Shown piece by piece: positions 11,890-64,000 of a stretch of 64,000 bases of DNA. The translations under genes and the position numbers were made by a program. The stretch is taken from positions 62,001-126,000 of IMG/VR virus record IMGVR_UViG_3300030102_006934, one strand, 5' to 3'. A model generated the notes under the pieces. That model had not been told where the DNA came from. It did no database searches and was given only the letters and a program-made list of their open reading frames with translations. Each line of letters starts with the position of its first letter. Within the stretch, counting starts at the first letter, position 1.

Positions 11890-12330
11890 ATGAAATATTT
11901 CATAAGAAAGAGGTTATTAGAAGAGATTGGTCCAGGAGAACCAAGTAAGGCGGCTGGTGTATTAATTAAGTGTATTAAGACAAATAGAGTTTTACTATTA
12001 CTTAGAGCTGAAGGTACACATTCAAACAAGTGGGCTATGGTTAGTGGCGGTATAGATGAAGGTGAAGAAGTTTTAAGTGGCCTTAAAAGAGAGATAGGTG
12101 AAGAGATGCAAATAAACGCTGATAATCCAGACACTAAAATAGATTTTACTTTTAAGAAAAAAATTGTTAATACAATTAAAAATTCAGAGTTTTATTATTA
12201 CGAAGGATTTACTAATTCAGAATTTATACCTAAATTAGACCATGAGAACCATGATTACATTTGGTGTAGCAAAGAACAACTACCATCACCATTATATCCT
12301 GGCTTAAGCACTAAGATACAAAATATATGA
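11890..12330 (+). CDS. Nudix hydrolase with KYFIRKRLLEE leader
   Basis: Nudix box GGIDEGEEVLSGLKREIGEE. Confidence 0.85.
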   Translation: MKYFIRKRLLEEIGPGEPSKAAGVLIKCIKTNRVLLLLRAEGTHSNKWAMVSGGIDEGEEVLSGLKREIGEEMQINADNPDTKIDFTFKKKIVNTIKNSEFYYYEGFTNSEFIPKLDHENHDYIWCSKEQLPSPLYPGLSTKIQNI

Positions 12331-12644
12331 GTAAGAAAAATTTAGAAGGTAAGATATCGTTAGAAGAGGTTCTACACAAATTCAACAAACAAAACGAAAA
12401 GTTTAAGAAAAATTTAGAAAAAGAAGAAGCATACGAAGATAGTATAGAAACTATGGACTCTATATTTAACGATATTAAAGCTACCAAAGAAAATACAACT
12501 AGAAATAAACTTAAATTTATTGACGAAGTTAAATCTGGACTTGGTGATAAGGTTAAAAAAAACCCAAACAAAATAAAAGTAATAAAGAAAAATTGGTATC
12601 AAAAGATATCAGAAACTATAAAAAATATTTTTACTAAGTTTTAA
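12327..12644 (+). CDS. hypothetical protein
   Basis: ORF, ATGA overlap. Confidence 0.55.
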   Translation: MSKKNLEGKISLEEVLHKFNKQNEKFKKNLEKEEAYEDSIETMDSIFNDIKATKENTTRNKLKFIDEVKSGLGDKVKKNPNKIKVIKKNWYQKISETIKNIFTKF

Positions 12645-12645
12645 T

Positions 12646-12876
12646 ATGAATTACGAGGAGCTAATAGAAACTATTTCAGAAGTTATAAACAATAAAAAAA
12701 TATATAAAGAAGGTTTAACACTACTTTATGAACTAGATGAAGAAAATCACGCCAAAATGGATGAGCACCTATTCTATAAATCAAAACCAGAGGGTAATTT
12801 TGAACATAGAGATATAATTGAACTTGAAATAGATGGTGTTATTATTAAATTTATTAAAAAAAGTTTGGAATATTAA
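12646..12876 (+). CDS. hypothetical protein
   Basis: ORF. Confidence 0.55.
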   Translation: MNYEELIETISEVINNKKIYKEGLTLLYELDEENHAKMDEHLFYKSKPEGNFEHRDIIELEIDGVIIKFIKKSLEY

Positions 12877-12918
12877 AATCTTTTTTTTACATTTGTATCG
12901 AACGTTAAAAATAATCAC

Positions 12919-13428
12919 ATGAAAATTAATGTAAAAAGGGATATGAAATTAACAATACTAACCGCAATATTATTTAGTTTATTAGTAACTTCTTGTAAGA
13001 AAGAAGACTATATACCATATGAGCTTGTGGAAGAAAATAATCAAGATACAACACAATGGCAGAGTTCTTATTCTGACGGTGGGACAATAACCAATGGTAC
13101 ATATACTAATGACTTATTAGGTACTAAATGGGTTTTAACTAAATACGTCTCTGCTTTCGCTACAGAATACCCAAATGATACTATAGAATTTATTAGTGTT
13201 AACACATACGAATTAAATGGTTCTGGTGACAGGACGTATAATTTATCAAATATACCATCATCAACTAACTACGATTTAACATTAAATTATTTTTCACCCT
13301 TTGGTGGTAGTCACTACTCTGGAAATGTAGGTTATTACTTCGTTGACGATGGTGAGATAAATAACGTTGAGTTCACTAATATACAAAATACAAGCATGAC
13401 AATTAGAGCTTGGTTTGAAAAAATTTAA
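12919..13428 (+). CDS. lipoprotein (lipocalin-like Bacteroidota type)
   Basis: Lipobox LVTS-C followed by KKED; LLGTKW motif. Confidence 0.65.
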   Translation: MKINVKRDMKLTILTAILFSLLVTSCKKEDYIPYELVEENNQDTTQWQSSYSDGGTITNGTYTNDLLGTKWVLTKYVSAFATEYPNDTIEFISVNTYELNGSGDRTYNLSNIPSSTNYDLTLNYFSPFGGSHYSGNVGYYFVDDGEINNVEFTNIQNTSMTIRAWFEKI

Positions 13429-13493
13429 AAAAAAACTTGACAATTAAAATAATCGTATTATATTTGTTTCGAATTTAAACTATAACTATTATT

Positions 13494-31202: not shown

Positions 31203-31472
31203 GTGGAAAATCTTATTAGAAAAATCATAAGGGAAGAAATGGATGGCTTTGATTGGGCTAGAGATATAGCCAAACCATTTATTATTACTACAACTGATAC
31301 AAACAATAGATATTGGGTGTCTAAAGGAAGACCAATAAAGGTTGGAGATTTTGTTGTTTATAAAACCGCTTCAGGTATATGGAGAGAATATGGTATAATG
31401 AATCCAGAGAAAGTAGATGATGCTAATAATTATGAGGGTTATTATAGTGTTATAGATAAAATATTAGATTAA
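31203..31472 (+). CDS. leader + FDW single-module protein
   Basis: MENLIRKIIREEMDGFDWARD. Confidence 0.7.
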   Translation: MENLIRKIIREEMDGFDWARDIAKPFIITTTDTNNRYWVSKGRPIKVGDFVVYKTASGIWREYGIMNPEKVDDANNYEGYYSVIDKILD

Positions 31473-31530: not shown

Positions 31531-31923
31531 ATGAATATCAGAAAAATCATAAGAGAAGAAATAGTTTTATTAAAAGAAGATTTAGAAACTTATAGTCTAA
31601 TGGGATATAAGAAATTACCCAATGAAGAAAAAAAGATAATAGACCAAATAGTAGATAAACTAATAAGTAAAACTAAATTATATAAAAGAAAGGGAGAGAT
31701 TAAATTCCCTTTTTATAGTGAACCTATGAGATGGGATTTGAACTATTGGAAGAGATATGGCTTTGGTCAGTCATTCTTTAATTTTATAGACAGTTATCTG
31801 GAAGATAATAATATAGAATTTAAAAGTCCTATATTAAATAACATGGTGAATTTAAACTTTATGGGCCCAAGACAATTAACACCCCATGAGATGGTAAAGT
31901 ATATATATCTAAACAAAATATAA
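31531..31923 (+). CDS. leader-bearing hypothetical protein
   Basis: MNIRKIIREE...LLKED. Confidence 0.7.
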   Translation: MNIRKIIREEIVLLKEDLETYSLMGYKKLPNEEKKIIDQIVDKLISKTKLYKRKGEIKFPFYSEPMRWDLNYWKRYGFGQSFFNFIDSYLEDNNIEFKSPILNNMVNLNFMGPRQLTPHEMVKYIYLNKI

Positions 31924-33868: not shown

Positions 33869-34249
33869 ATGCGTAAATTAATAAAAAAGATATTAAAAGA
33901 GAATGAATGGGACTGGGTTAAAAAAACGAAAATCTCAATTCCCTTTGACTATGTTGAAATAGGCACTGCGTATACAATAGATTTTATGGATCCCATGAGA
34001 TTTATTAAGGAGACAGAAAAATGTGGTGTTGCTAATGCAGAAGATATAGCATATAAGACTTATTATGCAATACCTAGGGAAAGAGCTTATCTTGAATCTG
34101 GAGCCCTGTACTGTGGAGATGGTAATACAGAACATTTTAAAGGCAGTAAAACTTCTTTGTCACTAAGCTTTTATGACAATCAAAATAAATTAATACATTC
34201 ATACTACTGGATAGCCGAAGAAGAAGGGGTAGAACTAAGACCTTATTAA
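33869..34249 (+). CDS. leader + WDW single-module protein
   Basis: MRKLIKKILKENEWDWVKK; module resembles third module of 46340. Confidence 0.7.
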   Translation: MRKLIKKILKENEWDWVKKTKISIPFDYVEIGTAYTIDFMDPMRFIKETEKCGVANAEDIAYKTYYAIPRERAYLESGALYCGDGNTEHFKGSKTSLSLSFYDNQNKLIHSYYWIAEEEGVELRPY

Positions 34250-36288: not shown

Positions 36289-37197
36289 CTAACTTAGTAA
36301 GTCTGTACGACCATCTATATAAGTTATATGTCCGTAATTACCACTCATTAGAATATCCTTGTACTCACCCCAATCTTTTGTTGTTCTATATAGGGTTGCG
36401 TTTCTTACAATATAACCCTTATTAGTAAAAGTACTACAGTAATGTTTCCATACTTCACCATGACCCTCTTTCCAATCAATACCCATGTCTATTAATGTTT
36501 GTTGTACCTCACACGCTTCATCATCATCCAACTGACTTATATCAATATAATATTCACCATTGTAAAAATCATAGTTAGGTATTTCATCAACCCAACCGAA
36601 GTCATTTTTAGACTCGTTGATATCGGTTAGTTTTGGTTGTAAAACATATACACCTCTGTTAAATTTTCCAGCAACTGTAGAACTAAATTGTGGAGCACAA
36701 TCTTTAGCGTAGAAATCTTTTTTACTATGTTGGTGTGTGCAAACCTTAACTTCAGCTGAATTAATCCCAGGTTCTAACCAATATATTGTAGGTATTCCTT
36801 GAGAGGAAACCCATTTACTTTTTTCAAGGGGACTATACCAATAAAATGGTTTGTTGTATAAAATATCAATAGTTTCTTCATCTACCTTAGAATCAATATC
36901 CTTAATCCAATCAAAGTCATTAGATTCTTTAATTGATTTAGGGTTAACTTTTTCGGCTGAATGCCACCATCCTTGATGTTTCTCTGACCATCTATATCCT
37001 AGACTTGTCGCTAGATTAAATAGTAAGTCTTCATCTATATCGTCTACATCGTCTACAAAGTTCTTTATAATATAACGCATTTTATCATCGTCTCTAAAAG
37101 ATATATAAGGTGAAATTGTTAATTCATCAGCTTCTATATCCTTAATCCATTGAAGGTCATTATTAATTTCTTCTCTGATAACTTTTTTCAGACTCAT
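36289..37197 (-). CDS. leader + three-module FDW polyprotein
   Basis: MSLKKVIREEINNDLQWIKD; IKESNDFDWIKD; INESKNDFGWVDE. Confidence 0.75.
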   Translation of the reverse strand: MSLKKVIREEINNDLQWIKDIEADELTISPYISFRDDDKMRYIIKNFVDDVDDIDEDLLFNLATSLGYRWSEKHQGWWHSAEKVNPKSIKESNDFDWIKDIDSKVDEETIDILYNKPFYWYSPLEKSKWVSSQGIPTIYWLEPGINSAEVKVCTHQHSKKDFYAKDCAPQFSSTVAGKFNRGVYVLQPKLTDINESKNDFGWVDEIPNYDFYNGEYYIDISQLDDDEACEVQQTLIDMGIDWKEGHGEVWKHYCSTFTNKGYIVRNATLYRTTKDWGEYKDILMSGNYGHITYIDGRTDLLS

Positions 37198-38502: not shown

Positions 38503-38946
38503 TTATTCTTTTGGTTTGACGGTGCTTAGTTCAGTATCCCTATGATTGTCAAAATAGTCTCTACAACGTTCTATTACCTCGTCTTTATCCTCTTGGGATT
38601 CTGGATACCAAGCCATCATCGATACAATTATAGATTTTTTATTATAGGCAGTTCCAGGTGGGTAAATATCAAAATAAAGTGAGTTAGGATATCCACTATC
38701 ATCTTTTATCCCATCACGAATACTATATACTGAACTACTAGTGTGTAAATCATCATTACTCTCTATTACACCAATTATATGATCTAATATCATTAATTGT
38801 TGTTCTTTTGGTATATTACCTAACCATACCTTATAATCACCTGGTGGGTATTTATCGATATTTAATATTTCATTTGGGATGAGTTTGATTTCTTTTACCC
38901 AATCAAAATCATTAATTTCTTCTCTTATAATATTCCTAAGACTCAT
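38503..38946 (-). CDS. leader + FDW single-module protein
   Basis: MSLRNIIREEINDFDWVKE. Confidence 0.7.
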   Translation of the reverse strand: MSLRNIIREEINDFDWVKEIKLIPNEILNIDKYPPGDYKVWLGNIPKEQQLMILDHIIGVIESNDDLHTSSSVYSIRDGIKDDSGYPNSLYFDIYPPGTAYNKKSIIVSMMAWYPESQEDKDEVIERCRDYFDNHRDTELSTVKPKE

Positions 38947-46255: not shown

Positions 46256-46339
46256 GTCTTTTAGATTCGTTTATAAATATAGTAACATGTATCAAAGTAT
46301 AGTATTTATTTTTAACCTTTAATCGATATTTATTAATAT

Positions 46340-47809
46340 ATGAGTATCAAAAAATACATAAAAGAAGAGATGGATAGTTTTGACTGGATTAAGGACGTAA
46401 AAACTAATGATACTATCGCTAAAGAAATTTATGATACTCTAAAATGGCATAAGGTTCCCAATGTAACAACAGATTTTGTGAAAGTACCGTGGGTTGACAT
46501 TGTTTTTGCGGTAAGAAAAAGAAACTTAAGTGACTCCAAAATACCTTTAATCACCCCAAGTACATTTTACAAAGGTTTTACAAAATACGTAAAAGAATAT
46601 TACAATATTTTTGATCCTCAAACTGGTGTGTTAGAAATTTACAATAAAGTTAGGGCATTAATGGGGGATAAAATTCATGGAACTATTACTGAGTCTAATG
46701 ACTTTGGTTGGACAAATAGTTCTAAACTCATATACCCTCAAGACTTAGTCGGTTATTATTTTACTTACACTGAAAAAGAATATACAATAACTAAGGTGGA
46801 TGAAATGTATTTAAGTGATGATCCAGAAGATGAAAAACTCACCGTTTATTATAAGTATCGAGCTTATGAGGGGTTACGTAAAAACAAAATGGATGTGGAT
46901 ACTTTGATTTATAGAATCAAAGGTGGTGACTACGGTCTATATGACTTGGAGGGTAATCCTGTTAATCCAGATGATTTGGTATATAGTGATGGTAAGTTGG
47001 AAGATGTTGATTCTGTTAATGAAAATTCTGATTTTGATTGGGTGAGTGATGTTACCCCTTATATTGATAAGGTTACTGACCTACAAATTGGTGAGTATTA
47101 TGAAATAAAGGACATAGACACAAAACTTTTCACCATGTTGGTTGATTGTGGGTGGCACTATGAGTCTGAATTAATTAGAGATTTATATGATAAAGGTGAA
47201 ATACTTACCGTTAAAATTAGTGAAACGGTACCAAACGCTATATTAAATTACTATGTTTATTGTGATGGGCGTACAACATCATGGAAACCTAATAATACCG
47301 TTTCAAAGAGGGGTCCTGTAGCGGGAATAGAACTTTATAGTGAAATGGATACCTCACATCACCCAAGACATGATTGGATACCTTTCCACTCTTTTTATAT
47401 TACAGATGGTATGATAACATTTTACAGAGATAATAAGGATTTGAATGAGTCCGCAGAATTTGGTTGGATAGAAGATGTAAAACCAAATGTGTTGAAGGCT
47501 TTGGCTGATGCGAGTACGGGTGATGAGAGAATTAATTTTATTTATAGTGATGAAAATAAATATTTCACCTCCATTGAGGATGAAAAAGGTTTTAACTACT
47601 TTACTAGAGTATCTCTTATTTCATACTTAAGAAAAGTTAGGCAGGATTGGGATACCATGCCTGAGGTAATACTTAATAGTATGACCGTTGATGAGATGTT
47701 GGGTTTTATAGAAAAATTTTTAAAAGATAACTTCCCTGACCAACAACCAGTTGCTATATATGAGGACTATTTATATTTATATGAATTTATTAAACGTGGA
47801 TTAAAATAA
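46340..47809 (+). CDS. leader + four-module FDW polyprotein
   Basis: IKEEMDSFDWIKD; ITESNDFGW; VNENSDFDWVSD; LNESAEFGWIED. Confidence 0.8.
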   Translation: MSIKKYIKEEMDSFDWIKDVKTNDTIAKEIYDTLKWHKVPNVTTDFVKVPWVDIVFAVRKRNLSDSKIPLITPSTFYKGFTKYVKEYYNIFDPQTGVLEIYNKVRALMGDKIHGTITESNDFGWTNSSKLIYPQDLVGYYFTYTEKEYTITKVDEMYLSDDPEDEKLTVYYKYRAYEGLRKNKMDVDTLIYRIKGGDYGLYDLEGNPVNPDDLVYSDGKLEDVDSVNENSDFDWVSDVTPYIDKVTDLQIGEYYEIKDIDTKLFTMLVDCGWHYESELIRDLYDKGEILTVKISETVPNAILNYYVYCDGRTTSWKPNNTVSKRGPVAGIELYSEMDTSHHPRHDWIPFHSFYITDGMITFYRDNKDLNESAEFGWIEDVKPNVLKALADASTGDERINFIYSDENKYFTSIEDEKGFNYFTRVSLISYLRKVRQDWDTMPEVILNSMTVDEMLGFIEKFLKDNFPDQQPVAIYEDYLYLYEFIKRGLK

Positions 47810-47810
47810 A

Positions 47811-50800
47811 ATGGGGGATAAAAAGGAAGAATTTAATTGGGTTAATGATATCTCAAGTGATTACTGGGACTACCATAACGTTTTAGTGTTTAATGATGCC
47901 ATTAGTTATGAAGAGTTCGATGATTTAATCTCTCACGCTTTATATTCCAAGTCACCTAAAAATTCACACCAATGGGGAGACGATGGGAAAAAAGAGGCTT
48001 GGAATTATTTAACCCACCTTGTAAAAAGTTATAGTGTGGGTTATCTTATTTGGGATAAACCATATTTATCCGTTTCAGCTCAACACAAGCTGAAACAAGG
48101 AGACCCAAAATTAGTAAATTATAAGGATATAGTTAATCAAAAACCAAAGTTAGATGAGTCTGATGAATTTAGTTGGGTTAGAGATGAGGTTGATAGTCCG
48201 ATTAGGTTTAGTGTAGGTGATAAAATAAGGGTTATTAATGTGGGTGATGTACAAACTTTCATCGATTTTTTGGGTACTGCTGGTGTATATTATCGTAAAG
48301 GTCTACTTGGAACTAATATTGAGGGTGAGATTATAGATGGTGGTAATGAATATTTATTCCCCTTAAGGGAGAAAAATAGGGGTAAAATAATTTTTTTACC
48401 ATGGTTAGACATGGTAGATTATTGGGCTGACTCCTACCCTGATTTGGATGTTAGGTATGAATTTATAGATGATGACTTAAACGAATCTAGTGATTTAGAT
48501 TGGATTAGAGATGTTGAACCGCCTAATTTAGATTTTAGTTTTGATGGTAAGGAACATTGGGTTGACGTTTCACAAATAGATAGAGAAGGTAGGAAAAAAA
48601 TTGTAAATTATATTAAAAAAACTGTTCCAAATTACGAAGAATTTGAAAGTGATCTGTTCGGTCATATATCTAGAGGTAATTATAAAGGAATTATTATTCA
48701 TTGTGGTTCTGATAGGACCTATTATGAACCTGAAGAAGGTTTATTATGTAGTGCAAATAGTAGTTACGAAGATGATTATAAAATAGACAACCCATACTCA
48801 GATATGCTAAAATCTGTTTATCTTGATGGCCAAGAAATATTAGATTATATTACTGTGACTGATGATGTTGATGAAGAATTAGATGAATCTTTGGAGTGGT
48901 CAGACAAGGACGCACCTTTTGATGAAAAAGATAAAAGTTTTGAATCAGACCCTAGTTGGAAGAATGATGAAGATTGGTCATTAAACCCCGAAAGGTCTTA
49001 TTGGAAACAAGGGGATACTGGGGGTTCTGGTGGTGGTGACGTGAATGAGTCCAATGAGTTAGAATGGATTTATGATATAAGACCCACATTAAAAGACGTT
49101 TTTGATGAAAATTTGATTGGGGTTGGGGATATTTTAACACTTTATGGGACATTGGAAGATGAAAATGGTTTGGAAGAACAACAGGTAGATGATTTTAAAG
49201 TAAAGATAGAGACTGTCTCAAATTCAGAAAGACCTCGATTAGTCTCTACTTACTTCAAACCATTACAAAAAAAATATTGGGGTTTCTTGGGTTATGATGG
49301 TACGGGAGATATAAGGTTCACTAAAAAAGATGGTAACTTACAGTTGGTGGATAGAATTAGTGGTAAAGGTTTGGTAGAAGGGTCTAATGACTGGGATTGG
49401 GTGGAAGATATACCAGGAACAAAAGAATTTGACCAAAAATATAGATATTTTGAAATTTTGGCTTGTTATGGTGTTGATTATGAATCTGAAGAGTGTGATG
49501 ATGAATATTCACATTATGTTAGAATACCCAAATATGAGGCTGATGAAATATGGGACCATTCGGTTGATTATTTCGCTGGAATTGCTGATGGTGATTCTTA
49601 TGATGTTATTATGTACGCAATACAAAATAGACTAATATCACACTTTGAAATCAACGAAATTGTTATGTTTGAGGGTGTTAGAGAGTTGGATAAAAATACT
49701 TATGATAAACTAACAGATTATAGAGATGACTTGCTTACAAATGAATCATATTTTATCAATGAAAAAAGTGATGACTTTGACTGGGTTAAGGATATAAAAC
49801 CCAATTGGGGTACTTATTATGGTGGTATAATAATGAAGGACATTGAGGGTCTACCTAAAAAATTAGAAGATGTAACAAGTGAAATGTTACTACCTATTTG
49901 GATGAAAATAGAAACTATTAATAGACAAATATTAACTAGAAAAAACAGAGATGATAAACATGGTGTGAGTGAGACGTTAATTGATTCTATGGATCAAATC
50001 GAGTGGCTGTTTGGTAGAATAATGGCTTTGGTTGATGGTGAAACCGATAGTTTAGTATCTTCCAGAATGGAACCACAGGAGTATTACAATTCAAGAAAAC
50101 TAACTATAATTAGTTACATAAAAGGCATGGCTCAACAATTAGAACTACTCGGTGAATCTAATGACTTTGGTTGGGTAGAAGATGTAACACCAAGGATGGA
50201 CGCTACCCTATTAAAACCTGGACAAAAATTCTATGACAAATGGGGTGGCGTTATAAGAGTGTTAGAGTACTTGGGTAGGGATGATTCTGAAGGTGAAGTT
50301 TGTTATGAACCCCCTTGTAGTTTATTAAGATTTAGGAAAATAAAAGACCCAAGTGGTTACATACCAATTCCTGGATTACCAGCTGATGACCCACAAAACA
50401 CAGATATGGTAATGAACCCAAACGATTTCGATAGTTACATTGAATCTGGTAAATTAAAGTTAGTTAGTAAACGTACAATGTATGAATCAAAAGATTTTGA
50501 TTGGGTTAGGGATGTTGAAACCGATAGAACTGACTCTAAGTATTATATAATAGATAGAAGAAGTTTCTCTGGGGTTCCTGAAAAACAAAAAGATGAGTGG
50601 TTTATGATAGAAATATTAGAAAATGACAAGTATGGCATTCATTGGAGACCTTACGCATGGAATTTGGTGAATGTTCATACTTGGAATCCAACCCATCGAG
50701 TTGGAAAAATGTCAAACGATGAATTTAAAAATTTATTAGGTTTAGGTTCAAAGGATAAACCTTACTGGTACCCTCATGATGGGGATTTGACTGACCTACC

Positions 50801-51575
50801 CAAAAATTACGACCATGGGTTGTTGTCTCAACTAAATACCCCCAAAAATCTTAGGGAGTCTGATGATGTTAGCCATTTTAATTGGGTTAAAAAGATCTCA
50901 AGTGACGACTATGAACCCCGTACTGGTGACCACATTGAAATTGTTAATCAAGGAAAACCACATTTATTTAAAAATTGGTTATCCCCCACTATTTGGATGG
51001 ATTATAACATGGGTAAAATAACTAACACAGATGGTAATATAGAGGGTGTAGTACAAAATGATTACCCAACTCAAAACGCTCAAGATAATTTTGTCGTCAA
51101 AATAAAAGGTACCAAAAATGAATATATTTTTCTACCTAAGAGATATAAAATAAAACAAATTAAAGAAAAAACTAGGGACCCTGAATGGCACGGTTTAGAC
51201 ATTATATATAGACCTATTGAATTAAGATCAGAATTAAAAGAGGATTCTAGTGACACCTCTGATTGGGACTGGGCTAAAAAGATTGAACCAAAATATACAA
51301 AAATAGCACCAAATATATATCAATATGGTAGTGGGAGTTTACCAAGGATAAAGGTTGTATTTAAAAGGGTAGTGGATGGTGAAATAAAAACCACCGCAAT
51401 AGAGTTTGACGATTATGAGTTTTTAGATAGTGAAGAATACATGAATAGGCATTTCATTTTAATGGGTGTTGATGATGAGGATAATGATTGGATAGTTGAT
51501 GGTATAGCTTATCTTATTGGTGGGGGTGAGTATGAGTGGGATGTTAATTGGGATTCTATAGAAAATAATGGTTAG
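47811..51575 (+). CDS. ~10-11 module FDW polyprotein
   Basis: Motif recurs about every 110-130 aa across 1254 aa. Confidence 0.8.
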   Translation: MGDKKEEFNWVNDISSDYWDYHNVLVFNDAISYEEFDDLISHALYSKSPKNSHQWGDDGKKEAWNYLTHLVKSYSVGYLIWDKPYLSVSAQHKLKQGDPKLVNYKDIVNQKPKLDESDEFSWVRDEVDSPIRFSVGDKIRVINVGDVQTFIDFLGTAGVYYRKGLLGTNIEGEIIDGGNEYLFPLREKNRGKIIFLPWLDMVDYWADSYPDLDVRYEFIDDDLNESSDLDWIRDVEPPNLDFSFDGKEHWVDVSQIDREGRKKIVNYIKKTVPNYEEFESDLFGHISRGNYKGIIIHCGSDRTYYEPEEGLLCSANSSYEDDYKIDNPYSDMLKSVYLDGQEILDYITVTDDVDEELDESLEWSDKDAPFDEKDKSFESDPSWKNDEDWSLNPERSYWKQGDTGGSGGGDVNESNELEWIYDIRPTLKDVFDENLIGVGDILTLYGTLEDENGLEEQQVDDFKVKIETVSNSERPRLVSTYFKPLQKKYWGFLGYDGTGDIRFTKKDGNLQLVDRISGKGLVEGSNDWDWVEDIPGTKEFDQKYRYFEILACYGVDYESEECDDEYSHYVRIPKYEADEIWDHSVDYFAGIADGDSYDVIMYAIQNRLISHFEINEIVMFEGVRELDKNTYDKLTDYRDDLLTNESYFINEKSDDFDWVKDIKPNWGTYYGGIIMKDIEGLPKKLEDVTSEMLLPIWMKIETINRQILTRKNRDDKHGVSETLIDSMDQIEWLFGRIMALVDGETDSLVSSRMEPQEYYNSRKLTIISYIKGMAQQLELLGESNDFGWVEDVTPRMDATLLKPGQKFYDKWGGVIRVLEYLGRDDSEGEVCYEPPCSLLRFRKIKDPSGYIPIPGLPADDPQNTDMVMNPNDFDSYIESGKLKLVSKRTMYESKDFDWVRDVETDRTDSKYYIIDRRSFSGVPEKQKDEWFMIEILENDKYGIHWRPYAWNLVNVHTWNPTHRVGKMSNDEFKNLLGLGSKDKPYWYPHDGDLTDLPKNYDHGLLSQLNTPKNLRESDDVSHFNWVKKISSDDYEPRTGDHIEIVNQGKPHLFKNWLSPTIWMDYNMGKITNTDGNIEGVVQNDYPTQNAQDNFVVKIKGTKNEYIFLPKRYKIKQIKEKTRDPEWHGLDIIYRPIELRSELKEDSSDTSDWDWAKKIEPKYTKIAPNIYQYGSGSLPRIKVVFKRVVDGEIKTTAIEFDDYEFLDSEEYMNRHFILMGVDDEDNDWIVDGIAYLIGGGEYEWDVNWDSIENNG

Positions 51576-51577: not shown

Positions 51578-52792
51578 ATGGAGATAAGAAAAATAATAAG
51601 GGAAGAATTAAATGATTTCGATTGGGTTAGGGATGTTGAACCTGAATTAACGCCAGAAACATTAGAATTAATCTATAATAAGCCATTTCACTTTCACCGT
51701 ACAGAAGATAGTGGACCAAATATGAAGAATGGTAAACCAACAGTCTACTGGGTGGATAGGAGGTTGAGTGAGTTAAAAAATACTAATAAGTCTTCTAAGA
51801 ACCCTATTGCGGATGATAGAGAGTTTTTTTTATGTTATAAAGAACCCCAAGGACCACACACACTTCACCAATGTAGTGAAATGTATGCTAAAACAATAAT
51901 CAGTTATATCAAAAGAAAACAACTTGTTCAACAGAAAGAATTATCAGATATTAAAGAATCTGAAATTTATTTAAATAAAATACTTAATAGGTTATCCTTA
52001 ATTAAAGAAGATGGTAAAAAACCAGACATGGAGTGGGATTTTACTAAGACTAATTTAGATAAATCTAAAAAATGGGTTAAAACAAAAGAAGATGTTAAAA
52101 AATATCTTTCACTCTTATTTGATAAATTAAAAAATTTACCTAGAAAAACTAAAATTAAAATAATTAAGTATGTTTTAACTTCTTTTATTGGTTTATTAAC
52201 AATAAGCCAATTACAAGATATTGTGGATGAGACCTCACCAGAGAAGATAGAAATTAAGAAACCAATAAAACAAGAACTTCCAACAGACAAGGATTCAACC
52301 AAAGTTATGAACACTCAAATAAATAAAATTAGAAAACCTAGTGAAGAGTTAACTACTTTTCTAAAAAAAGAAGAGGGGTACGTTGATAAAGGTTATAAGA
52401 TTGGTGATGGTAAAATAACGATTGGTTGGGGTCATGCTGAGGATATTGATGGTTCTAAATATACATTGGGTCAACAGATTGACACAACAGAAGCCGAAAC
52501 ATTATTAAGACAAGATATTAAAGAATCTTCAGATGCTTTAAACAGAATTTTAGATGATTGGGAAAGTAAGGGTATCAAGGTTGATATTACACAAGATATG
52601 TATAATGTGATGACATCTATGGTTTTTAATATGGGTATCGGTAACTTTAGAAATTCTGATTTTATCCAATTAGTTAAGGGTAATGAGTTGAGTAGAGCTA
52701 AGGAAAAAATAAAAACAACAAGTTCACACTTATTTGGTAAATTTCCAGGTCTTAAAAAAAGAAGAAAATTAGAATCAGATTTATTTAATTAA
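51578..52792 (+). CDS. leader + FDW module + C-terminal phage lysozyme (GH24-like) domain
   Basis: MEIRKIIREELNDFDW; KKEEG...YKIGDGKITIGWGH, SMVFNMG.GNF, PGL..RR..E..LF. Confidence 0.8.
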   Translation: MEIRKIIREELNDFDWVRDVEPELTPETLELIYNKPFHFHRTEDSGPNMKNGKPTVYWVDRRLSELKNTNKSSKNPIADDREFFLCYKEPQGPHTLHQCSEMYAKTIISYIKRKQLVQQKELSDIKESEIYLNKILNRLSLIKEDGKKPDMEWDFTKTNLDKSKKWVKTKEDVKKYLSLLFDKLKNLPRKTKIKIIKYVLTSFIGLLTISQLQDIVDETSPEKIEIKKPIKQELPTDKDSTKVMNTQINKIRKPSEELTTFLKKEEGYVDKGYKIGDGKITIGWGHAEDIDGSKYTLGQQIDTTEAETLLRQDIKESSDALNRILDDWESKGIKVDITQDMYNVMTSMVFNMGIGNFRNSDFIQLVKGNELSRAKEKIKTTSSHLFGKFPGLKKRRKLESDLFN

Positions 52793-53977: not shown

Positions 53978-54018
53978 TAAAAAAACTCATTCTCCAAAAG
54001 AAAATGAGTTTTTTTTTT
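53978..54018. terminator. bidirectional terminator hairpin
   Basis: A-run-CTCATT...AATGAG-T-run. Confidence 0.65.
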
Positions 54019-54019
54019 A

Positions 54020-54153: not shown

Positions 54154-54196
54154 ATTACTTAATAATAATAATAATAATAAAACTATTAGTCAACAC

Positions 54197-54580: not shown

Positions 54581-54642
54581 AATACAAATATACTACAATT
54601 TTTTATGTAAAACAAGATATTTATGAATATATAAAACATGGG

Positions 54643-57348
54643 ATGTTAAAAAAAGTTACTTTACCTAAAAATATTAATTTTTTAAAGGAGTCGGAATTTG
54701 ATTTTGTTGACGATAAAACCAACAACCCTTTAGATGGTGTTAAGTTTACTATGAATAAATCACCAATAAAAGGTGACGAGAAAAACATTTACTATATAAT
54801 AGATGACGGTGGCTTATTTGTTAAAATAAAATGGTACGGTGGTGGTTATTTAAAAAGAACCTTTAAGAGAGATAGGGTAATGGATTTATTTAAAAGAGGG
54901 GTTTGGGAACCTTATTTTGAACCTACTAAGAACATTAATGAATCAGAAAATGGTGACTTTGATTGGATAAAAGATACTACCCCAAAAGAGATAGACAACT
55001 ATTATAAAGTTGTTTTGGATTTTTTTGATTGGAGTAGGAAATATAAAGGTTACAGTTATAGTGCAAATGATGTAGGTGTTGTAGAGTGGTACATACCAAT
55101 AGTTGATTTTCCATATCCGTTTCATGACTATTATTTTTACGCAACCCCTTATTGGGAGGGTAATGGTGTTATGAATGTTACCGCTGTGGATGAACAAGGC
55201 CACGAAATAGAGTTACACACAATACCATTACCTAAATTTAAATACGAAGAACAACTAAAAGAATGGTTAACGTCAGAGTACCCAAAAATAGTTTACGAAG
55301 AAATAAAACATTTTGAAGACACTCGGCAATATAGTGGTGATACTTTAACCGAAACCAAAGATTTACAGTGGATAAAAGATGTGGGTACCAATAGAATCGA
55401 TTTGGTTAAAAAAATAAAAGAGACGTTATCTAATCATGGTGTTGAGGTAGAATGGGAAAGGGACCACTTGGCTTATAACCAAGAAGACACAGATGGTACT
55501 AGGGGTGAGGTTTTTGCTAAATTTTTCTATGATGCTGGTGATAGACAGTTTTTTATTGAACTTATAGAATCGGAAAATGATTTATATGGTTTTTATGTTT
55601 ATGAATATAATGAACAATATGACACTTATTATGTAAACGCTAATTATAATTCCCTTGGTATACCTAGGGAATCAGATGAAACTTGGCGTCATGTGTGTTG
55701 GACGGTTCTAAATCAAATGGATGCTTTTCCAAAAAAAGATAAGGTTGGTGATTTAGCAGATTATTTAAAAGAATCTGATGATTTCGAATGGGTTAGAGAT
55801 TACAAAGATGTTTTTGATAAAAACAAAAACTACGCTCTATACGTGGGTAAAATTAATATTGATGACATGACTTTACCGCCAAGGGAAAATCCGAATAACA
55901 AATCAATATACATTCATAAATTAAATAAACAGGTGAAGTTTATTCTTAGTTTAATACATCAGTTTGAAGATATGGGTTATGATATAAGGGAGTTAGATAG
56001 AGAGATTGCCATCCCCTCAAACCAAAGAGTTTCTTGGATATACATAAACGGTAAAGAAAGTAAATCTGGAAAACCAATGTCGTTAGAGTTTGATGACATA
56101 CCCCCTGGAGACCCAACCTATGATGGTCAATATGAGATTATTGATAATTTTAAAGACTTTTATTTTTTAATTACTAATGAAGTTATTAAAGAGTCCGATA
56201 ATTTGGATTGGATTAGGGATATTAAATCACAAGGTTTTGAAAAAAGTAAAAGTTATGTTGTTGATGTTAGTAACTTAATGGTAGATACACCAATGTCTGT
56301 TTCCCCTACTTCTGAGGAATACACTAAATTAACAAGAGCAGATGTTCTAGACAAATTTAAAGCGTTAGGTTATAATGTTGATGATATTTCTGTTGCTGAC
56401 GCTGATTATCTATATATTGAACCTAACGATGAAGCTGGTTATTGGGATGATACTGTTTGGGTTAAGCAAACTCATTGGGTAGACTATGATATGGAACACA
56501 ACACACCCGACCCAACTTATAATGGCAAGTACGAAATGATAGATGTTAATGACCTTATGTTTTTACTTGATAATAAATTTATTAGTGAATCTAAATCAAT
56601 AACTGAAGTAGCGGGTATTTCATTTGAATCAAGGGAATGGGCTAAAATAATAAATGACAAAATATTAAAAAACCCAAATGAAAAAGAGAGGTTGATTATT
56701 GATGGTTACGATTATCCAGAAGCCTTTAAGAGTTTCCCAATAGACTATATTGTGATTGATTTTTACGATAAGTTAACTGGTTATGCTCAAGAACACTCTG
56801 GTTATGATAAAGATGGTAACTATGTTGTACTATTATATATACAACCTAAAGTAATTAGTGGTACTGGTGGGTTTAACCTAAGAACAGTACTTAATCATGA
56901 AATGAAACACGCATGGGACGATTATAACAGGCTTTCTAAAGGCCAACCTAGTATTGATAAGAATAAGGAAAACAGGGAGTTGTATAACAAAGATTTTATA
57001 TTAATGTTATCAGATAAAAATGTTCGTGGACCCATAAAAGAAATCTTAAAATATTATTATTATTTATCTGAACTAGAGAAGACGGCTTACCTAGAAAATG
57101 TTTATGATGGTAATTTAAATTACGAAAAAATAATAAGGGATATATCTAGTAAAGACTTCGAACCTTTTAAAGAAAGATTTGATTTGGATATTAATTGGCA
57201 TTTAATGAATACGGCTTACGATATACCATTCTTGAAGAAATTTAAATCCCCAATAGAATTTATTGATTATAGTTCTGAGGAATTAAGGTCAAAAGCGGTT
57301 GATATGATTAAGAAAATCAACAAAATGAAATATATTCATAATAAATAA
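54643..57348 (+). CDS. five-module FDW polyprotein with C-terminal HExxH metallopeptidase-like domain
   Basis: LKESEFDF; INESENGDFDWIKD; LTETKDLQWIKD; LKESDDFEWVRD; IKESDNLDWIRD; LNHEMKHAWD...E..AY. Confidence 0.78.
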   Translation: MLKKVTLPKNINFLKESEFDFVDDKTNNPLDGVKFTMNKSPIKGDEKNIYYIIDDGGLFVKIKWYGGGYLKRTFKRDRVMDLFKRGVWEPYFEPTKNINESENGDFDWIKDTTPKEIDNYYKVVLDFFDWSRKYKGYSYSANDVGVVEWYIPIVDFPYPFHDYYFYATPYWEGNGVMNVTAVDEQGHEIELHTIPLPKFKYEEQLKEWLTSEYPKIVYEEIKHFEDTRQYSGDTLTETKDLQWIKDVGTNRIDLVKKIKETLSNHGVEVEWERDHLAYNQEDTDGTRGEVFAKFFYDAGDRQFFIELIESENDLYGFYVYEYNEQYDTYYVNANYNSLGIPRESDETWRHVCWTVLNQMDAFPKKDKVGDLADYLKESDDFEWVRDYKDVFDKNKNYALYVGKINIDDMTLPPRENPNNKSIYIHKLNKQVKFILSLIHQFEDMGYDIRELDREIAIPSNQRVSWIYINGKESKSGKPMSLEFDDIPPGDPTYDGQYEIIDNFKDFYFLITNEVIKESDNLDWIRDIKSQGFEKSKSYVVDVSNLMVDTPMSVSPTSEEYTKLTRADVLDKFKALGYNVDDISVADADYLYIEPNDEAGYWDDTVWVKQTHWVDYDMEHNTPDPTYNGKYEMIDVNDLMFLLDNKFISESKSITEVAGISFESREWAKIINDKILKNPNEKERLIIDGYDYPEAFKSFPIDYIVIDFYDKLTGYAQEHSGYDKDGNYVVLLYIQPKVISGTGGFNLRTVLNHEMKHAWDDYNRLSKGQPSIDKNKENRELYNKDFILMLSDKNVRGPIKEILKYYYYLSELEKTAYLENVYDGNLNYEKIIRDISSKDFEPFKERFDLDINWHLMNTAYDIPFLKKFKSPIEFIDYSSEELRSKAVDMIKKINKMKYIHNK

Positions 57349-61604: not shown

Positions 61605-61847
61605 TTGGAAGATCCTAGTAAAATTTATTTAATACTTGACTCATTGAAGGAGTCTAGGTATGACTATATAGCTGTTGTTAATCCTAAAAATGGGGAAAAA
61701 TTAATGAGTTTGAAGGTTAAGTTAAATAGTGAACGCTTTATGGACCTTTTAGACACTTTTTTCGATTCTGGTTTTAAAGTTGTTAAGATTAGTAAGGAAG
61801 AATTTAACTCTTTAGAAACAGAGGACGTTTTAAGATTTAAAATTTAA
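61605..61847 (+). CDS. hypothetical protein
   Basis: ORF after ATATTTAT. Confidence 0.55.
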   Translation: MEDPSKIYLILDSLKESRYDYIAVVNPKNGEKLMSLKVKLNSERFMDLLDTFFDSGFKVVKISKEEFNSLETEDVLRFKI

Positions 61848-61851
61848 TTGA

Positions 61852-62211
61852 GTGATGAGTAGAATGAATAAAAAAATAAACAAAGAACCTTTACTATCTG
61901 AGAAAAAAATAGATAAAATTATAAAGAAGTATCTATTAGAGAGGGAAGAAGTAAATGATGACTATAGTGAAGAGTTAGAAGATTTTAGTGAAGATACTAA
62001 AGAAGTTTTTAGTGGTATGATAGAAGGTTTGGGAGAAGTTTTGGTAGATTTAGACTTTATAAAAAATAAAGAAGGTGATGTAAAAATCTATAAAAAATAT
62101 AATAAACATCTATATGCCGATAATCATTTAAATACTTTAATTAACAAATTAGAAGATGTTATCAATGAATTAAGTTTCTTAGTAGAGGGTGAAGATACTG
62201 AAGATGTTTAA
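61852..62211 (+). CDS. acidic hypothetical protein with IDKIIKKYLLE motif
   Basis: ORF. Confidence 0.55.
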   Translation: MMSRMNKKINKEPLLSEKKIDKIIKKYLLEREEVNDDYSEELEDFSEDTKEVFSGMIEGLGEVLVDLDFIKNKEGDVKIYKKYNKHLYADNHLNTLINKLEDVINELSFLVEGEDTEDV

Positions 62212-62222
62212 CATTACTTATA

Positions 62223-63344
62223 TTGAGTAAAATACATAAATTAAATAAAAATAATAACCAAGAACTACTATTGTGGTTAAACTCTTTGTGCGAACCCAAC
62301 GATAGTGTTTTTTGTAAACCAAATAAGGGTTTAATATTCTTATCTGAAAACTTACCCAGAAACTACCCACTAAATAATTTTATAAAAGACATAAAAATCA
62401 TATACAAAGAACTTAAACCATATGGTAATAACAATATGGTTATTTTTAGGGGTTTAATAGAGAATATAATAAACCTAGATACACCAATAAACACCATAAA
62501 AATAATATCTGAATACGTTAAAAGAGCTGACAATAGTGAAGATATAAAATCAAAGTTAAGGAAATTTAAAGAAGGTGATTGGTCACCCACTAGTTTGGAT
62601 GATTTTATTAAAAGAACAAAACACCAAACCTACAATGAGTATGAAAATTCTTTTAATGGTGATAATTTTGAATCACATAGAACTAGATTAATTTTAAATT
62701 TCAAAAAAGAGGAAGGAATTAACAACGTAGAGACTATTAAAAAAATATTAAAAGAAGATAAAAATAATACACCTAAAATAGCGAAAGACTTATATAAAAA
62801 TATTATAGATAATTTTGTGGGTGATTTAGTAAAGTCTGACCTTAAATGTGTTAAAAATATTTTAGACACTGAAGGTAACCTTGTGATAGAAAAGGGTGAC
62901 TTAGTCGAGGTTAAGAAAATAGATTATGAAGCCGATAGTTATTTGTCAGAATTTTTTAGTGTTTATAAGAGTAGTGTGGATAAATTGCCAAGTTACGCGA
63001 AAAAAAGAGGTTTTAAGGATAATTATAATGATTTAATTGATAGTGTCTATAATTTACTTTTAAAAAACGATGGTGGTATAATAAATTCGGTGAAAGATAG
63101 TTTCGTGGGTATTATTTACGATGAAAATATCTTTATAAAAAAAGAAAATTTAGAGTTATACTGGAGTAACAAAGGCAGGTCTAGTTGTGAGTCAGACCAC
63201 AGATTATCTATTAGGTATAGGGTTGTTAAAAAAGGTAATAAACCAATATATGGTTATGTCTACAAAGAAGGTGAACCATTACAGAAAGTAAAGTTAAATA
63301 TTCCCAACATAAACAAACAAAAAGTTTATTGTAAATGTAATTAA
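62223..63344 (+). CDS. hypothetical protein
   Basis: 373 aa ORF. Confidence 0.6.
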   Translation: MSKIHKLNKNNNQELLLWLNSLCEPNDSVFCKPNKGLIFLSENLPRNYPLNNFIKDIKIIYKELKPYGNNNMVIFRGLIENIINLDTPINTIKIISEYVKRADNSEDIKSKLRKFKEGDWSPTSLDDFIKRTKHQTYNEYENSFNGDNFESHRTRLILNFKKEEGINNVETIKKILKEDKNNTPKIAKDLYKNIIDNFVGDLVKSDLKCVKNILDTEGNLVIEKGDLVEVKKIDYEADSYLSEFFSVYKSSVDKLPSYAKKRGFKDNYNDLIDSVYNLLLKNDGGIINSVKDSFVGIIYDENIFIKKENLELYWSNKGRSSCESDHRLSIRYRVVKKGNKPIYGYVYKEGEPLQKVKLNIPNINKQKVYCKCN

Positions 63345-63379
63345 ATTATATGTAATTTATAGATATTTATTTATAAGTT

Positions 63380-64000
63380 ATGAAAAATATAATAAAAGAA
63401 GAGTTATTAGTTAAAGTCTTATTAGAGGGTAGATTAGAAGACGTTGTTAACAAATATGCCGATAATCAAGATGATGTTGATGACATACTCTATTTTTCAA
63501 AAAACGATCCATCTGGTAATAATAAATATTTAAAATGGATGGCGAACCAATGGTTAAAACCAGTACCAACTGGTGGAGCCAATAATAAAGGGGATATAGT
63601 TTTAGTTGTTAAATCTTTCCACGAAAATCTACAAAGAATAAATAATAAAGATATTAATAGTTACAAAACTTTTGGTGAATTAAAAAAAGTAACCGATGAG
63701 GCTGAAGAAAAGAAAAAAGAGGCTGAAGAAAAGAAAGCGGTTAAAAATCAAAAAGTTGTAATTTATAATGACGATGATTGGTTGGTCGTGTCCCCATTAT
63801 CGTGGGAAGCTTCTTGTTACTACGGTGCTGGAACAAAGTGGTGTGTGGCCTCAAAACAAACTGACACCCATTGGAAAGGTTACAATAAAAGATCTACCTT
63901 TTTTTATGTGATAGATAAAAATAAAAATCAAAAAGACCCACTTTATAAAGTCGCTTACAGAATGTTAAAGGATAATAGAAGGGAGTTTTGGGATGCTGAG
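63380..64000 (+). CDS. leader-bearing protein (MKNIIKEE...LLEG), 3' truncated
   Basis: Open frame to window end; DPSGNNKYL.W and ASCYYGAGTKWC motifs. Confidence 0.7.
   Translation, partial: MKNIIKEELLVKVLLEGRLEDVVNKYADNQDDVDDILYFSKNDPSGNNKYLKWMANQWLKPVPTGGANNKGDIVLVVKSFHENLQRINNKDINSYKTFGELKKVTDEAEEKKKEAEEKKAVKNQKVVIYNDDDWLVVSPLSWEASCYYGAGTKWCVASKQTDTHWKGYNKRSTFFYVIDKNKNQKDPLYKVAYRMLKDNRREFWDAE

What the first reader, a model, noticed from the sequence alone, without database searches (positions are those of the whole stretch)
11890..63420. Shared N-terminal leader M-x-[IL][RK]K[IV]I[RK]EE on enzymes and unknown proteins
Seen: MENLIRKIIREE, MNIRKIIREE, MSLKKVIREE, MSLRNIIREE, MSIKKYIKEE, MEIRKIIREE, MRKLIKKILKE, MKYFIRKRLLEE (Nudix), MKNIIKEE, and MMKDLIRRKLNE at 2051. 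Each is a short basic amphipathic peptide ending in a [IL]xE site, on genes behind the late-type motif. Inference: a capsid-targeting sequence analogous to the T4 CTS, implying a Nudix hydrolase and a lysozyme are packaged and delivered at infection.
Basis: partly seen in the sequence, partly recalled or inferred. Interest (0 to 1): 0.65.

Follow-up and report, generated by a model that had tools for sequence, protein, structure and literature searches.

The report
Shared leader and junction motif, jumbo phage
A 380-kb T4-like marine phage puts the same short N-terminal peptide, and a related "DFDW" junction between about 110-residue modules, on dozens of otherwise unrelated late proteins. This looks most like an expanded form of phage T4's capsid-targeting and protease-cleavage signal, but nobody has shown that these proteins are packaged.

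Summary
The leader has two parts. Part A is M-x-x-[IL]-[KR]-[KR]-[IV]-[IL]-[KR]-E-E. It starts 23 genes of this genome, against about 0.5 expected.

Part B is h-x-E-[S/E]-x-D-F-D-W-[VI]-x-D-[VI]. It follows A at many N-termini. It also recurs inside long proteins about every 110 residues, giving 38 strict hits against 0.3 in shuffles. B-bearing genes make up 8.4% of the genome.

The genome is a complete T4-like virus with a gp21-type prohead protease and a gp23 capsid protein. Part A copies the pattern of T4's 10-residue capsid-targeting peptides, h-x-x-h-h-x-E. The phage's own scaffold N-terminus has the same pattern, and four leader-type ORFs lie in the head-gene cluster. Of 412 internal junctions in metagenomic relatives, 88% carry h-x-E, against 15% at control positions.

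Family genes sit behind the motif ATATTTAT, which also precedes five virion or packaging genes. Both structure models leave the leader and junctions disordered.

The modules are acidic orphans without Pfam or PHROG families. At least 836 protein clusters in metagenomes share the motif.

Packaging and cleavage are inferred, not shown. The lysozyme is a solid member; the Nudix is a weak one.

The parts
31203..31472 (+). 89-aa ORF with a GTG start, carrying leader A+B
   Evidence: profile E = 1e-12. ATATTTAT lies just upstream.
31531..31923 (+). 130-aa ORF with leader A only, no DFDW
   Evidence: top matrix score of 24.1, and this ORF was not in the training set. ATATTTAT lies 5 nt before the ATG.
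33869..34249 (+). 126-aa single-module protein with the short form of A+B (…ILKENEWDW…)
36289..37197 (-). 302-aa protein: leader A+B plus two internal junctions (DFDW-type motifs at about aa 14, 94 and 199), giving three modules
   Evidence: Homologues have 2-5 modules with the junctions kept. In the AF2 model only module 3 (aa 208-302) is confident, and the leader and junctions have pLDDT below 50.
38503..38946 (-). 147-aa single-module protein with leader A+B
   Evidence: There are 17 orthologues in marine metagenomes that keep the leader. In one of them the same module is internal, behind Y-E-S-N-D-F-D-W. In the AF2 model, residues 1-27 have pLDDT below 50 and residues 28-147 form an alpha/beta domain with no PDB match.
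46326..46333 (+). ATATTTAT late-type promoter-like motif ahead of the 46340-52792 three-gene block
46340..47809 (+). 489-aa protein: leader A+B plus internal junctions (aromatic residue at aa 232 and 374, with a weaker one near 122)
47811..51575 (+). 1254-aa array of about 10-11 modules. B-type motif at aa 8, 120, 229, 417, 528, 656, 786, 896, 1023 and 1152. No part A.
   Evidence: The modules differ from one another beyond the motif. No Pfam or PHROG family.
51578..52792 (+). 404-aa protein: leader A+B, an unknown middle part, and a C-terminal T4-type lysozyme domain (aa 263-399)
   Evidence: PF00959, E = 3.5e-20. A separate endolysin of the usual kind lies at 6945-7907.
54643..57348 (+). 901-aa protein with a degenerate junction-like N-terminus and four internal junctions (about aa 106, 241, 381 and 521)
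   Evidence: ATATTTAT lies upstream.
11890..12330 (+). 146-aa Nudix hydrolase with a weak part-A-like N-terminus and no DFDW
   Evidence: PF00293 over aa 21-136. Matrix score 12.0, E about 0.4. ATATTTAT lies 5 nt upstream.
2051..2308 (+). 85-aa ORF with a weak part-A-like N-terminus
   Evidence: score 12.1. ATATTTAT lies upstream.
63380..64000 (+). Start of a 514-aa ORF with a weak part-A-like N-terminus. The ORF runs beyond the window.
   Evidence: score 14.2, E about 0.27. ATATTTAT lies upstream.

Best explanation
The motif is a two-part signal for late proteins that are built into the prohead of a T4-like jumbo phage.

Part A is a 9-10-residue amphipathic N-terminal peptide ending in [IL]-x-E. 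It is the counterpart of the T4 capsid-targeting propeptide: it brings the protein to the scaffolding core, and the gp21-type prohead protease then cuts it off after the glutamate.

The same [IL]-x-E-S site, followed by the acidic-aromatic stretch D-F-D-W-V-x-D-V, joins successive modules of about 110 residues in long proteins. These long proteins would therefore be polyproteins, cut inside the head into many small acidic proteins. They would correspond to T4's internal proteins and enter the host with the DNA. The lysozyme fusion would be a virion-carried wall-degrading enzyme.

The DFDW stretch stays on each module. It probably acts as a docking peptide, either for the core or shell or as an extended recognition site for the protease.

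What is shown: the motif, its statistics, the T4-like head genes, the likely late timing, and the disordered state of the motif in the models. What is inferred: targeting, cleavage, packaging and ejection.
For: 1. The phage has the required machinery.
- Peptidase_S77 protease at genome 151747-152478, 99 bits. It is 36% identical to T4 gp21, and the ELNHP and SSRG motifs align identically. That these hold the catalytic His and Ser is my recollection of T4 gp21, not a test made here.
- gp23 capsid protein.
- An acidic, gp22-like scaffold gene between the two.
- The T4 gp23 cut L-T-E|A aligns with I-S-E|T here, so [IL]-x-E specificity is probably kept.

2. The pattern matches T4. Read from NC_000866, T4 ipII/ipIII, gp24 and gp22 begin with 9-10 residues of the form h-x-x-h-h-x-E followed by a small residue. 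Part A has the same form. So does this phage's scaffold N-terminus (…S-I-I-D-E|A).

3. Four ORFs with leader-type sequence lie inside the head-gene cluster (genome 152592, 152917, 153796 minus strand, 158543). Two start with part A. The other two carry a variant with the A-like stretch at about residues 17-27.

4. The junctions carry the cleavage signature. In 412 internal junctions of metagenomic relatives, position -6 is hydrophobic in 69% (neighbouring positions 19-28%), -4 is E in 72% and -3 is S in 59%. h-x-E is present in 88%, against 15% at control positions.

5. The leader and junctions lie outside the folded domains in both AF2 models.

6. Modules behave as independent units.
- They mostly lack detectable similarity to one another.
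- The same module occurs alone with a leader in one place and fused internally in another.
- Close relatives differ in module number, from 2 to 5.

7. Timing is probably late. ATATTTAT precedes the homologues of gp17, gp19, gp20, gp21 and gp25, and 17 of 33 family genes. Most of the other family genes lie 7 nt or less behind another gene.

8. Selection acts on the peptide, not the DNA. Synonymous codons at junctions match at 0.615, against 0.574 expected from genome codon usage.

9. [quoted passage not shown]
Against: - There are no virion protein data for this phage or any relative, and there is no cultured relative. The nearest gp23 in the phage collection is 46% identical, in an uncultured 484-kb phage that lacks the motif.
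- The best-conserved part (DFDW) lies after the proposed cut and would stay on the product. T4 has nothing like it, and cleavage alone does not need it.
- The modules are strongly acidic (median pI 4.6), whereas T4's internal proteins are basic (my recollection, not checked here).
- Most family genes lie away from the head genes. The window cluster sits beside fibre-like genes (39277-46137).
- h-x-E is a short pattern and also occurs in 15% of control stretches.
- The AF2 alignments were shallow (17 and 20 rows), so 'disordered' is weak evidence.
- The protease-leader complex prediction gave no verdict.
Confidence: 0.45

Rival explanations
1. The motif is a flexible linker and docking peptide of a lineage-specific, fast-shuffling multi-domain family that works in the infected cell, not in the capsid. 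DFDW would bind some common partner, for example a phage or host chaperone, one of the two phage ClpP proteases, or a host target. The modules would stay joined like beads on a string.
For: - DFDW is the most conserved element, has the character of an acidic-aromatic linear motif, and is disordered in the models.
- The phage encodes ClpP and DnaJ.
- The modules are acidic orphans with no virion-protein signature.
- The gene clusters lie away from the head module.
Against: - It does not explain why part A copies the T4 propeptide pattern and the scaffold's own N-terminus.
- It does not explain why leader ORFs sit in the head cluster.
- It does not explain why h-x-E-S is conserved just before DFDW.
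- The upstream motif, which also precedes five virion or packaging genes, fits virion proteins better.
Confidence: 0.28
2. The proteins are external virion parts, such as decoration proteins, whiskers or side fibres. The shared N-terminus would be a short anchor that plugs different distal modules into one site on the particle, as in phages that carry several receptor-binding proteins with a common N-terminal adaptor.
For: - The window cluster (46340-57348) follows fibre-like genes (39277-46137). These genes themselves share an N-terminus of about 35 residues.
- The upstream motif is the one that precedes virion genes.
- Module number varies between close relatives, as is common for host-contact proteins.
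Against: - The leader is about 20 residues long and disordered, not a folded anchor domain.
- It is also found on small single-domain proteins and on enzymes (PAP2, a SprT-like zincin, Nudix).
- The two modules that were modelled are alpha/beta. They are not beta-helix, collagen-like or Ig-like.
- An anchor does not need to be repeated at every module boundary.
Confidence: 0.12
3. The shared N-termini are only inherited similarity in one large paralogous family. Alternatively, they are a coding-level aid to translation start on near-leaderless, A-rich mRNAs. Either way there would be no targeting role.
For: - The family expanded by duplication and shuffling.
- ATATTTAT ends only 3-8 nt before many start codons, so the first codons may matter for initiation.
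Against: - The motif is kept while the rest of the proteins diverges beyond recognition.
- Synonymous sites vary freely.
- The same motif is conserved at internal junctions, where translation start plays no part.
Confidence: 0.1

Closest known systems
T4 capsid-targeting sequence (CTS) and propeptides of IPI, IPII, IPIII, Alt, gp24 and gp22 (Mullaney & Black 1996, cited in PMC5694885 and PMC3012670)
   Same: - A short N-terminal peptide shared by otherwise unrelated late proteins.
- The h-x-x-h-h-x-E layout and 9-10-residue length.
- A phage with a gp21-family protease and a gp22-like scaffold.
- Diverse small cargo proteins.
   Different: - No sequence homology, only the same pattern.
- A second, better-conserved DFDW element follows the cut site.
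- The signal is repeated inside proteins of up to 1577 residues.
- The cargo is acidic rather than basic.
- There are dozens of members per genome, against about five in T4.
- Function has not been tested.
Propeptide-directed head proteins of giant phages phiKZ, 201phi2-1 and SPN3US (PMC5694885)
   Same: - Many head and ejection proteins are processed after Glu by a gp21-related protease.
- Paralogous families have conserved N-termini.
- Jumbo genomes.
   Different: - Those propeptides are mostly more than 100 residues long.
- Their cleavage motif is A/S/G-x-E.
- No repeated junction motif or polyprotein arrays are described for them.
Polyvalent proteins of phages and conjugative elements (PMC5512222)
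   Same: - Many unrelated small domains strung in one polypeptide.
- Variable architectures.
   Different: - The domains here match no known family.
- There is a uniform junction motif.
- No peptidase domain is embedded in the arrays.
Encapsulin cargo-loading peptides (from my own knowledge, not searched here)
   Same: - A short conserved linear peptide on diverse cargo that docks to the inside of an HK97-fold shell.
   Different: - They are usually C-terminal, are not cleaved and are not repeated.
- They belong to a different biological system.

Membership tests
T4-type capsid-targeting sequence / prohead propeptide | N-terminal peptide of about 10-20 residues shared by unrelated proteins | tested here: met
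   23 N-termini found against 0.5 expected. The bodies of the proteins mostly lack detectable similarity to one another.
T4-type capsid-targeting sequence / prohead propeptide | Ends in a gp21-type site: hydrophobic-x-Glu followed by a small or polar residue | tested here: met
   The leader ends I-[KR]-E|E. Junctions read [IL]-x-E|S in 88% of 412 cases, against 15% of controls. The T4 sites were read from NC_000866.
T4-type capsid-targeting sequence / prohead propeptide | The phage encodes a gp21-family prohead protease and a scaffolding core | tested here: met
   PF03420 at 99 bits. 36% identity to T4 gp21, with the ELNHP and SSRG motifs aligned identically. An acidic 412-aa protein lies between the protease and gp23.
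T4-type capsid-targeting sequence / prohead propeptide | Sequence homology to the T4 CTS (MKTYQEF…) | tested here: not met
   Only the hydrophobic spacing and the final Glu are shared. No residue identity beyond that.
T4-type capsid-targeting sequence / prohead propeptide | The peptide is sufficient to carry a foreign protein into the prohead | not testable with these tools
   This needs a genetic system or an in-vitro assembly system, and no cultured relative exists.
T4-type capsid-targeting sequence / prohead propeptide | The peptide is removed from the mature virion protein | not testable with these tools
   This needs virion mass spectrometry. The protease-leader complex prediction gave no verdict.
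Polyprotein processed by a viral protease | Regularly spaced, conserved, unstructured sites that match the protease's specificity, lying between independently folding units | tested here: inconclusive
   Median spacing is 107 residues. The junctions have pLDDT below 50. The same modules are found both alone and fused. No cleavage has been observed.
Pfam / PHROG families | A significant match of the modules to a described family | tested here: not met
   No family was found for any module of the window proteins. Among 133 metagenomic members only lysozyme (2), photolyase FAD domain (1), MIB_HERC2 (2) and ZW10_C2 (1) matched.

The most novel reading that the evidence does not exclude
Marine T4-like jumbo phages package polyprotein 'cartridges'. 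Each would be an array of up to about a dozen different acidic modules of about 110 residues. A two-part signal (a T4-like N-terminal propeptide plus a DFDW docking peptide at every junction) would load the array into the prohead, and the prohead protease would cut it at each [IL]-x-E-S. The virion would then inject a cocktail of dozens of small effectors, perhaps against host defences. Unequal exchange at the junctions would shuffle the set between strains.
Probability: 0.25. Interest if true: 0.85.

Novelty: new variant of a known kind. Interest (0 to 1): 0.68.

Why it matters
If the reading is right, a simple sequence rule would identify the packaged and injected protein set of a whole group of uncultured ocean phages. 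That set is about 8% of this genome, and at least 836 protein clusters in metagenomes share the motif.

It would extend the T4 capsid-targeting principle from a handful of internal proteins to polyprotein arrays. It would also point to a large pool of unknown small acidic proteins as candidate host-takeover or anti-defence factors.

The short signal could serve as a tool for loading foreign proteins into capsids, as the T4 sequence already does.

Even if packaging is wrong, the family is a large, undescribed, motif-delimited modular protein system with no Pfam or PHROG entry.

Tried and rejected
- **DNA-level repeat or recombination signal: rejected.** Codon choice at identical residues of the junctions matches genome expectation (0.615 against 0.574). 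Mean nucleotide identity between junctions is 60%.
- **One repeated domain whose first strand is DFDWV: not supported.** With the motif removed, only 10 small groups of modules are similar by BLASTP. AF2 leaves the motif outside the fold.
- **Fold of the 147-aa module: no match.** Foldseek against the PDB found nothing at E <= 0.001, and VIA-align wide gave a best Z of 3.7. The protein atlas gave no usable hit.
- **AF2 of the 302-aa protein: poor.** Mean pLDDT was 46.7, so it says nothing about whether the junctions contact the modules.
- **Complex prediction, protease plus leader: no verdict.** The score was 0.15 against a mark of 0.32. This is evidence neither for nor against binding.
- **Degenerate DNA patterns in IMG/VR:** found only about six related contigs. 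The other matches look unrelated, apart from four GC-36% contigs of one small-protein family that may be a distant relative.
- **Literature search for the motif:** nothing relevant.
- **Cluster look-up for names:** none given.
- **Sequencing runs.** The stretch is held in marine metagenome runs from 10 studies, and no RNA run holds it. The four DNA runs laid on it gave only short contigs and no joints, so there is no direct view of module gain or loss.
- **The nearest uncultured huge phages** (LR756502, LR756508) lack the motif. The same search finds 56 matches in this genome.
- **PHROG scan of the head-cluster leader ORFs:** no informative names.


Full report
**What the window is**

The window is bases 62001-126000 of a single 380,343-bp contig with 31% G+C. 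It is an IMG/VR virus record that CheckV rates as complete.

The genome is T4-like:
- A Peptidase_S77 (gp21) prohead protease lies at genome 151747-152478.
- A gp23 capsid protein lies at 155604-157406.
- BLASTP with T4 proteins finds homologues of gp17, gp19, gp20, gp21, gp23, gp25 and gp41.

No cultured phage is close. The best gp23 matches among isolates are about 29% identical. The best overall is an uncultured 484-kb phage at 46%. The stretch is held by marine metagenome runs from ten studies.

**The assembly gap**

The ten N at 28703-28712 lie in a small ORF (28651-28824). A paralogous copy near the contig end matches both flanks, at 100% and 96%, but has 80 nt between them. The true gap length and the reading frame across it are therefore unknown. 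The nearest leader gene starts at 31203, so the gap does not bear on the finding.

**The observation**

The signal is stronger and longer than described, and it has two parts.

Part A is M-x-x-[IL]-[KR]-[KR]-[IV]-[IL]-[KR]-E-E.
- Its core lies in the first 14 residues of 23 of 458 called genes, against about 0.5 expected from its internal rate.
- A matrix trained on 13 members recovers further N-termini that were not used in training. These include 31531, a PAP2 phosphatase at genome 368426, and a 173-aa ORF at 152917.
- An unbiased clustering of all N-termini makes this by far the largest group.

Part B is h-x-E-[S/E]-x-D-F-D-W-[VI]-x-D-[VI].
- It follows A directly in about 18 proteins.
- It also recurs inside long proteins. 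There are ten copies in the 1254-aa protein (47811-51575), four in the 901-aa protein, three to four in the 489-aa protein and three in the 302-aa protein.
- A strict form occurs 38 times in 22 genes, against 0.32 in shuffled proteins. These genes are 8.4% of the genome.

The internal junction is the same motif as the second half of the leader. Fused proteins even keep whole A+B leaders internally (genome 369954 and 372571; P0034).

**What lies between the motifs**

- The pieces are typically 105-130 residues long. The median spacing is 107 in 145 metagenomic proteins.
- They are acidic: median pI is 4.6, against 5.8 for all genes.
- With the motif removed, they mostly lack detectable similarity to one another. 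Only ten small groups are found by BLASTP, and some groups link different proteins.
- None has a Pfam or PHROG family. The exceptions are the T4-type lysozyme domain of the 404-aa protein, a PAP2 domain, and weak nucleotidyltransferase and SprT-like hits.
- AF2 models of the 147-aa and 302-aa proteins leave the leader and the junctions at pLDDT below 50. They fold the 147-aa module (aa 28-147) and the last module of the 302-aa protein (aa 208-302) as compact alpha/beta domains. The first of these has no PDB match. The alignments were shallow, so this is moderate evidence that the motif is a linear peptide outside the domains.

**Selection acts on the peptide**

Where junctions share an amino acid, they share the codon in 61.5% of cases, against 57.4% expected from genome codon usage. 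This rules out a DNA repeat as the cause.

Orthologues in marine metagenomes keep the leader while the bodies diverge. Homologues of the 302-aa protein have two to five modules with near-invariant junctions. The same module is found alone with a leader in one genome and internal behind Y-E-S-N-D-F-D-W in another.

A profile of the leader finds 836 representatives (clusters at 50% identity) at E <= 0.001 among 1.84 billion proteins. Each has 2-13 matched stretches, and the best stretch mostly starts at residue 1-2. Of 133 of these scanned against Pfam, six have any domain.

In IMG/VR only about six contigs of similar G+C carry the motif. A related huge phage has none, against 56 matches in this genome.

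**Timing**

ATATTTAT is the most enriched upstream 8-mer: 76 genes, 21-fold. It precedes the homologues of gp17, gp19, gp20, gp21 and gp25, but not that of the replicative helicase gp41.

It precedes 17 of 33 family genes, against 59 of 425 other genes (odds ratio 6.6, p = 1.4e-6). Ten of the remaining 16 family genes lie within 7 nt of an upstream gene on the same strand.

That is an inference from five virion or packaging genes and one early gene.

**How it most likely works**

The T4 comparison can be made from sequence.
- In NC_000866, ipII and ipIII begin M-K-T-Y-Q-E-F-I-A-E|A, gp24 begins M-A-K-I-N-E-L-L-R-E|S, and gp22 begins M-L-K-E-Q-L-I-A-E|A. All have two adjacent hydrophobic residues, any residue, then Glu at position 9-10. 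Three of them (ipII, ipIII, gp24) have a further hydrophobic residue three positions before that pair.
- Part A has exactly this form (I-x-x-I-I-x-E at residues 3-9).
- This phage's scaffold-like protein begins …R-K-S-I-I-D-E|A.
- The T4 gp23 maturation cut, after Glu65 (established knowledge), aligns with I-S-E|T here.
- The protease is 36% identical to T4 gp21, and the ELNHP and SSRG motifs align identically.
- Two ORFs that start with part A (152917 and 153796 minus strand) and two with a variant that has the A-like stretch further in (152592 and 158543) lie within the head-gene cluster.
- At 412 internal junctions, position -6 is hydrophobic in 69%, -4 is Glu in 72% and -3 is Ser in 59%. 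A hydrophobic-x-Glu is present in 88%, against 15% of control stretches.

My best explanation is that part A is a T4-type targeting propeptide, that the junctions are protease sites, and that the long proteins are polyproteins cut in the head into small acidic proteins that leave with the DNA. I give this 0.45.

The review literature describes the T-even internal proteins as diverse defence proteins that share only a conserved CTS (PMC3012670). It also describes conserved N-termini on processed head paralogues of giant phages (PMC5694885).

A separate endolysin of the usual kind (PG-binding plus amidase, 6945-7907) fits the idea that the leader-lysozyme has another job, such as entry. That step is an inference.

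**What does not fit**

- DFDW lies after the proposed cut and is better conserved than the cut site. Cleavage does not need it, and T4 has no counterpart. I suggest it is a docking peptide, which is a guess.
- The modules are acidic, unlike T4's basic internal proteins (recalled, not checked).
- Most family genes lie far from the head genes. The window cluster follows fibre-like genes.
- No proteomic, RNA or binding evidence exists. The complex prediction gave no verdict, and laying contigs showed no joints.

The rivals therefore keep weight:
- a cytoplasmic beads-on-a-string family with a docking linker (0.28);
- external virion parts with a common anchor (0.12);
- mere paralogy or a translation-start effect (0.10).

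The lysozyme protein is a full A+B member. The Nudix has only a weak part-A match and no B, although it sits 5 nt behind ATATTTAT. Calling it packaged is not justified. For comparison, T4's neighbouring e and nudE genes carry no CTS.

**Novelty**

The motif, the family and the junction architecture have no Pfam or PHROG entry, and no paper in the held library mentions them. The principle (propeptide-directed head proteins cut after Glu) is known from T4 and the giant phages. I therefore rate this a new variant of a known kind.

Noticed in passing
window 9859-10617 and 10614-11444; genome 158962, 159791 and 160255: A second shared N-terminus, M-R-R-[FQY]-D-K-…-A-N-…-L-E-…-Y, begins five otherwise different proteins. 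Two of them have weak kinase/ATPase-like PHROG hits. Three lie just after gp23.
   Followed up: partly
window 39028-39267, 39277-39678 and 41380-46137: The 133-aa and 1585-aa ORFs share an almost identical N-terminus over at least their first 24-36 residues. A 79-aa ORF just upstream begins like the 938-aa ORF at genome 211332. I took that ORF for the tail sheath from its N-terminal sequence only. The region looks like a patchwork of duplicated N-terminal pieces beside fibre-like genes.
   Followed up: no
window 27545-29617 against genome 374680-380343: Patches of 95-100% identity link this region, which includes the N gap, to the last 6 kb of the contig. The final 127 nt of the contig match genome 91491-91617. 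This could be a real duplication or an assembly problem.
   Followed up: partly
whole genome, upstream regions: Two upstream motif classes were found. TATATTTG (26 genes) matches, from memory, the TAnnTTTG -7 box of Bacteroidota promoters, which hints at a Bacteroidota host. ATATTTAT (76 genes) often ends only 3-8 nt before the start codon, so many of these mRNAs may be nearly leaderless.
   Followed up: partly
genome 152592-152915, 158543-158950 and 338678 (164 aa); L014 150-1010: A variant leader, M-K-K-…-[VI]-K-[LI]-N-E-S-[DQ]-L-E-…-L-V-K-K-[IV]-I-[KR]-E-E-E, carries two or three h-x-E sites in a row. This recalls the multiply cut N-terminus of T4 gp68. Two of these ORFs flank the scaffold and capsid genes.
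   Followed up: no
genome 153796-154200 (minus strand): A 134-aa ORF inside the head cluster combines a part-A leader with an H-E-x-x-H zincin motif. It has a SprT-like hit just under the Pfam cut-off. A second SprT-like gene lies at window 34876-35406.
   Followed up: partly
window 19336-20034; genome 220174-220848 (minus strand): The window ORF is a ClpP-type protease (PF00574, E = 4.5e-58). The second ORF was not scanned. Its N-terminus clusters with the first, and its counterpart in related contig L014 reads as ClpP by eye. So there may be two ClpP genes besides the gp21-type protease.
   Followed up: partly
window 13494-14948, 17100-18155 and 59015-60076 (minus strand): Other window genes: a protein assigned to a PHROG family labelled 'RNA-binding protein' (phrog_850; Pfam DUF7788/DUF2828), a full-length DnaJ, and a thymidylate synthase.
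   Followed up: no
L018, L019, L024 and L030 (IMG/VR contigs, G+C about 36%): A small protein family in other viral contigs carries …H-G-[LI]-[EN]-E-D-F-D-W-V-x-D-V… about 15 residues from its start. It may be a distant relative of the junction motif or a chance likeness.
   Followed up: no
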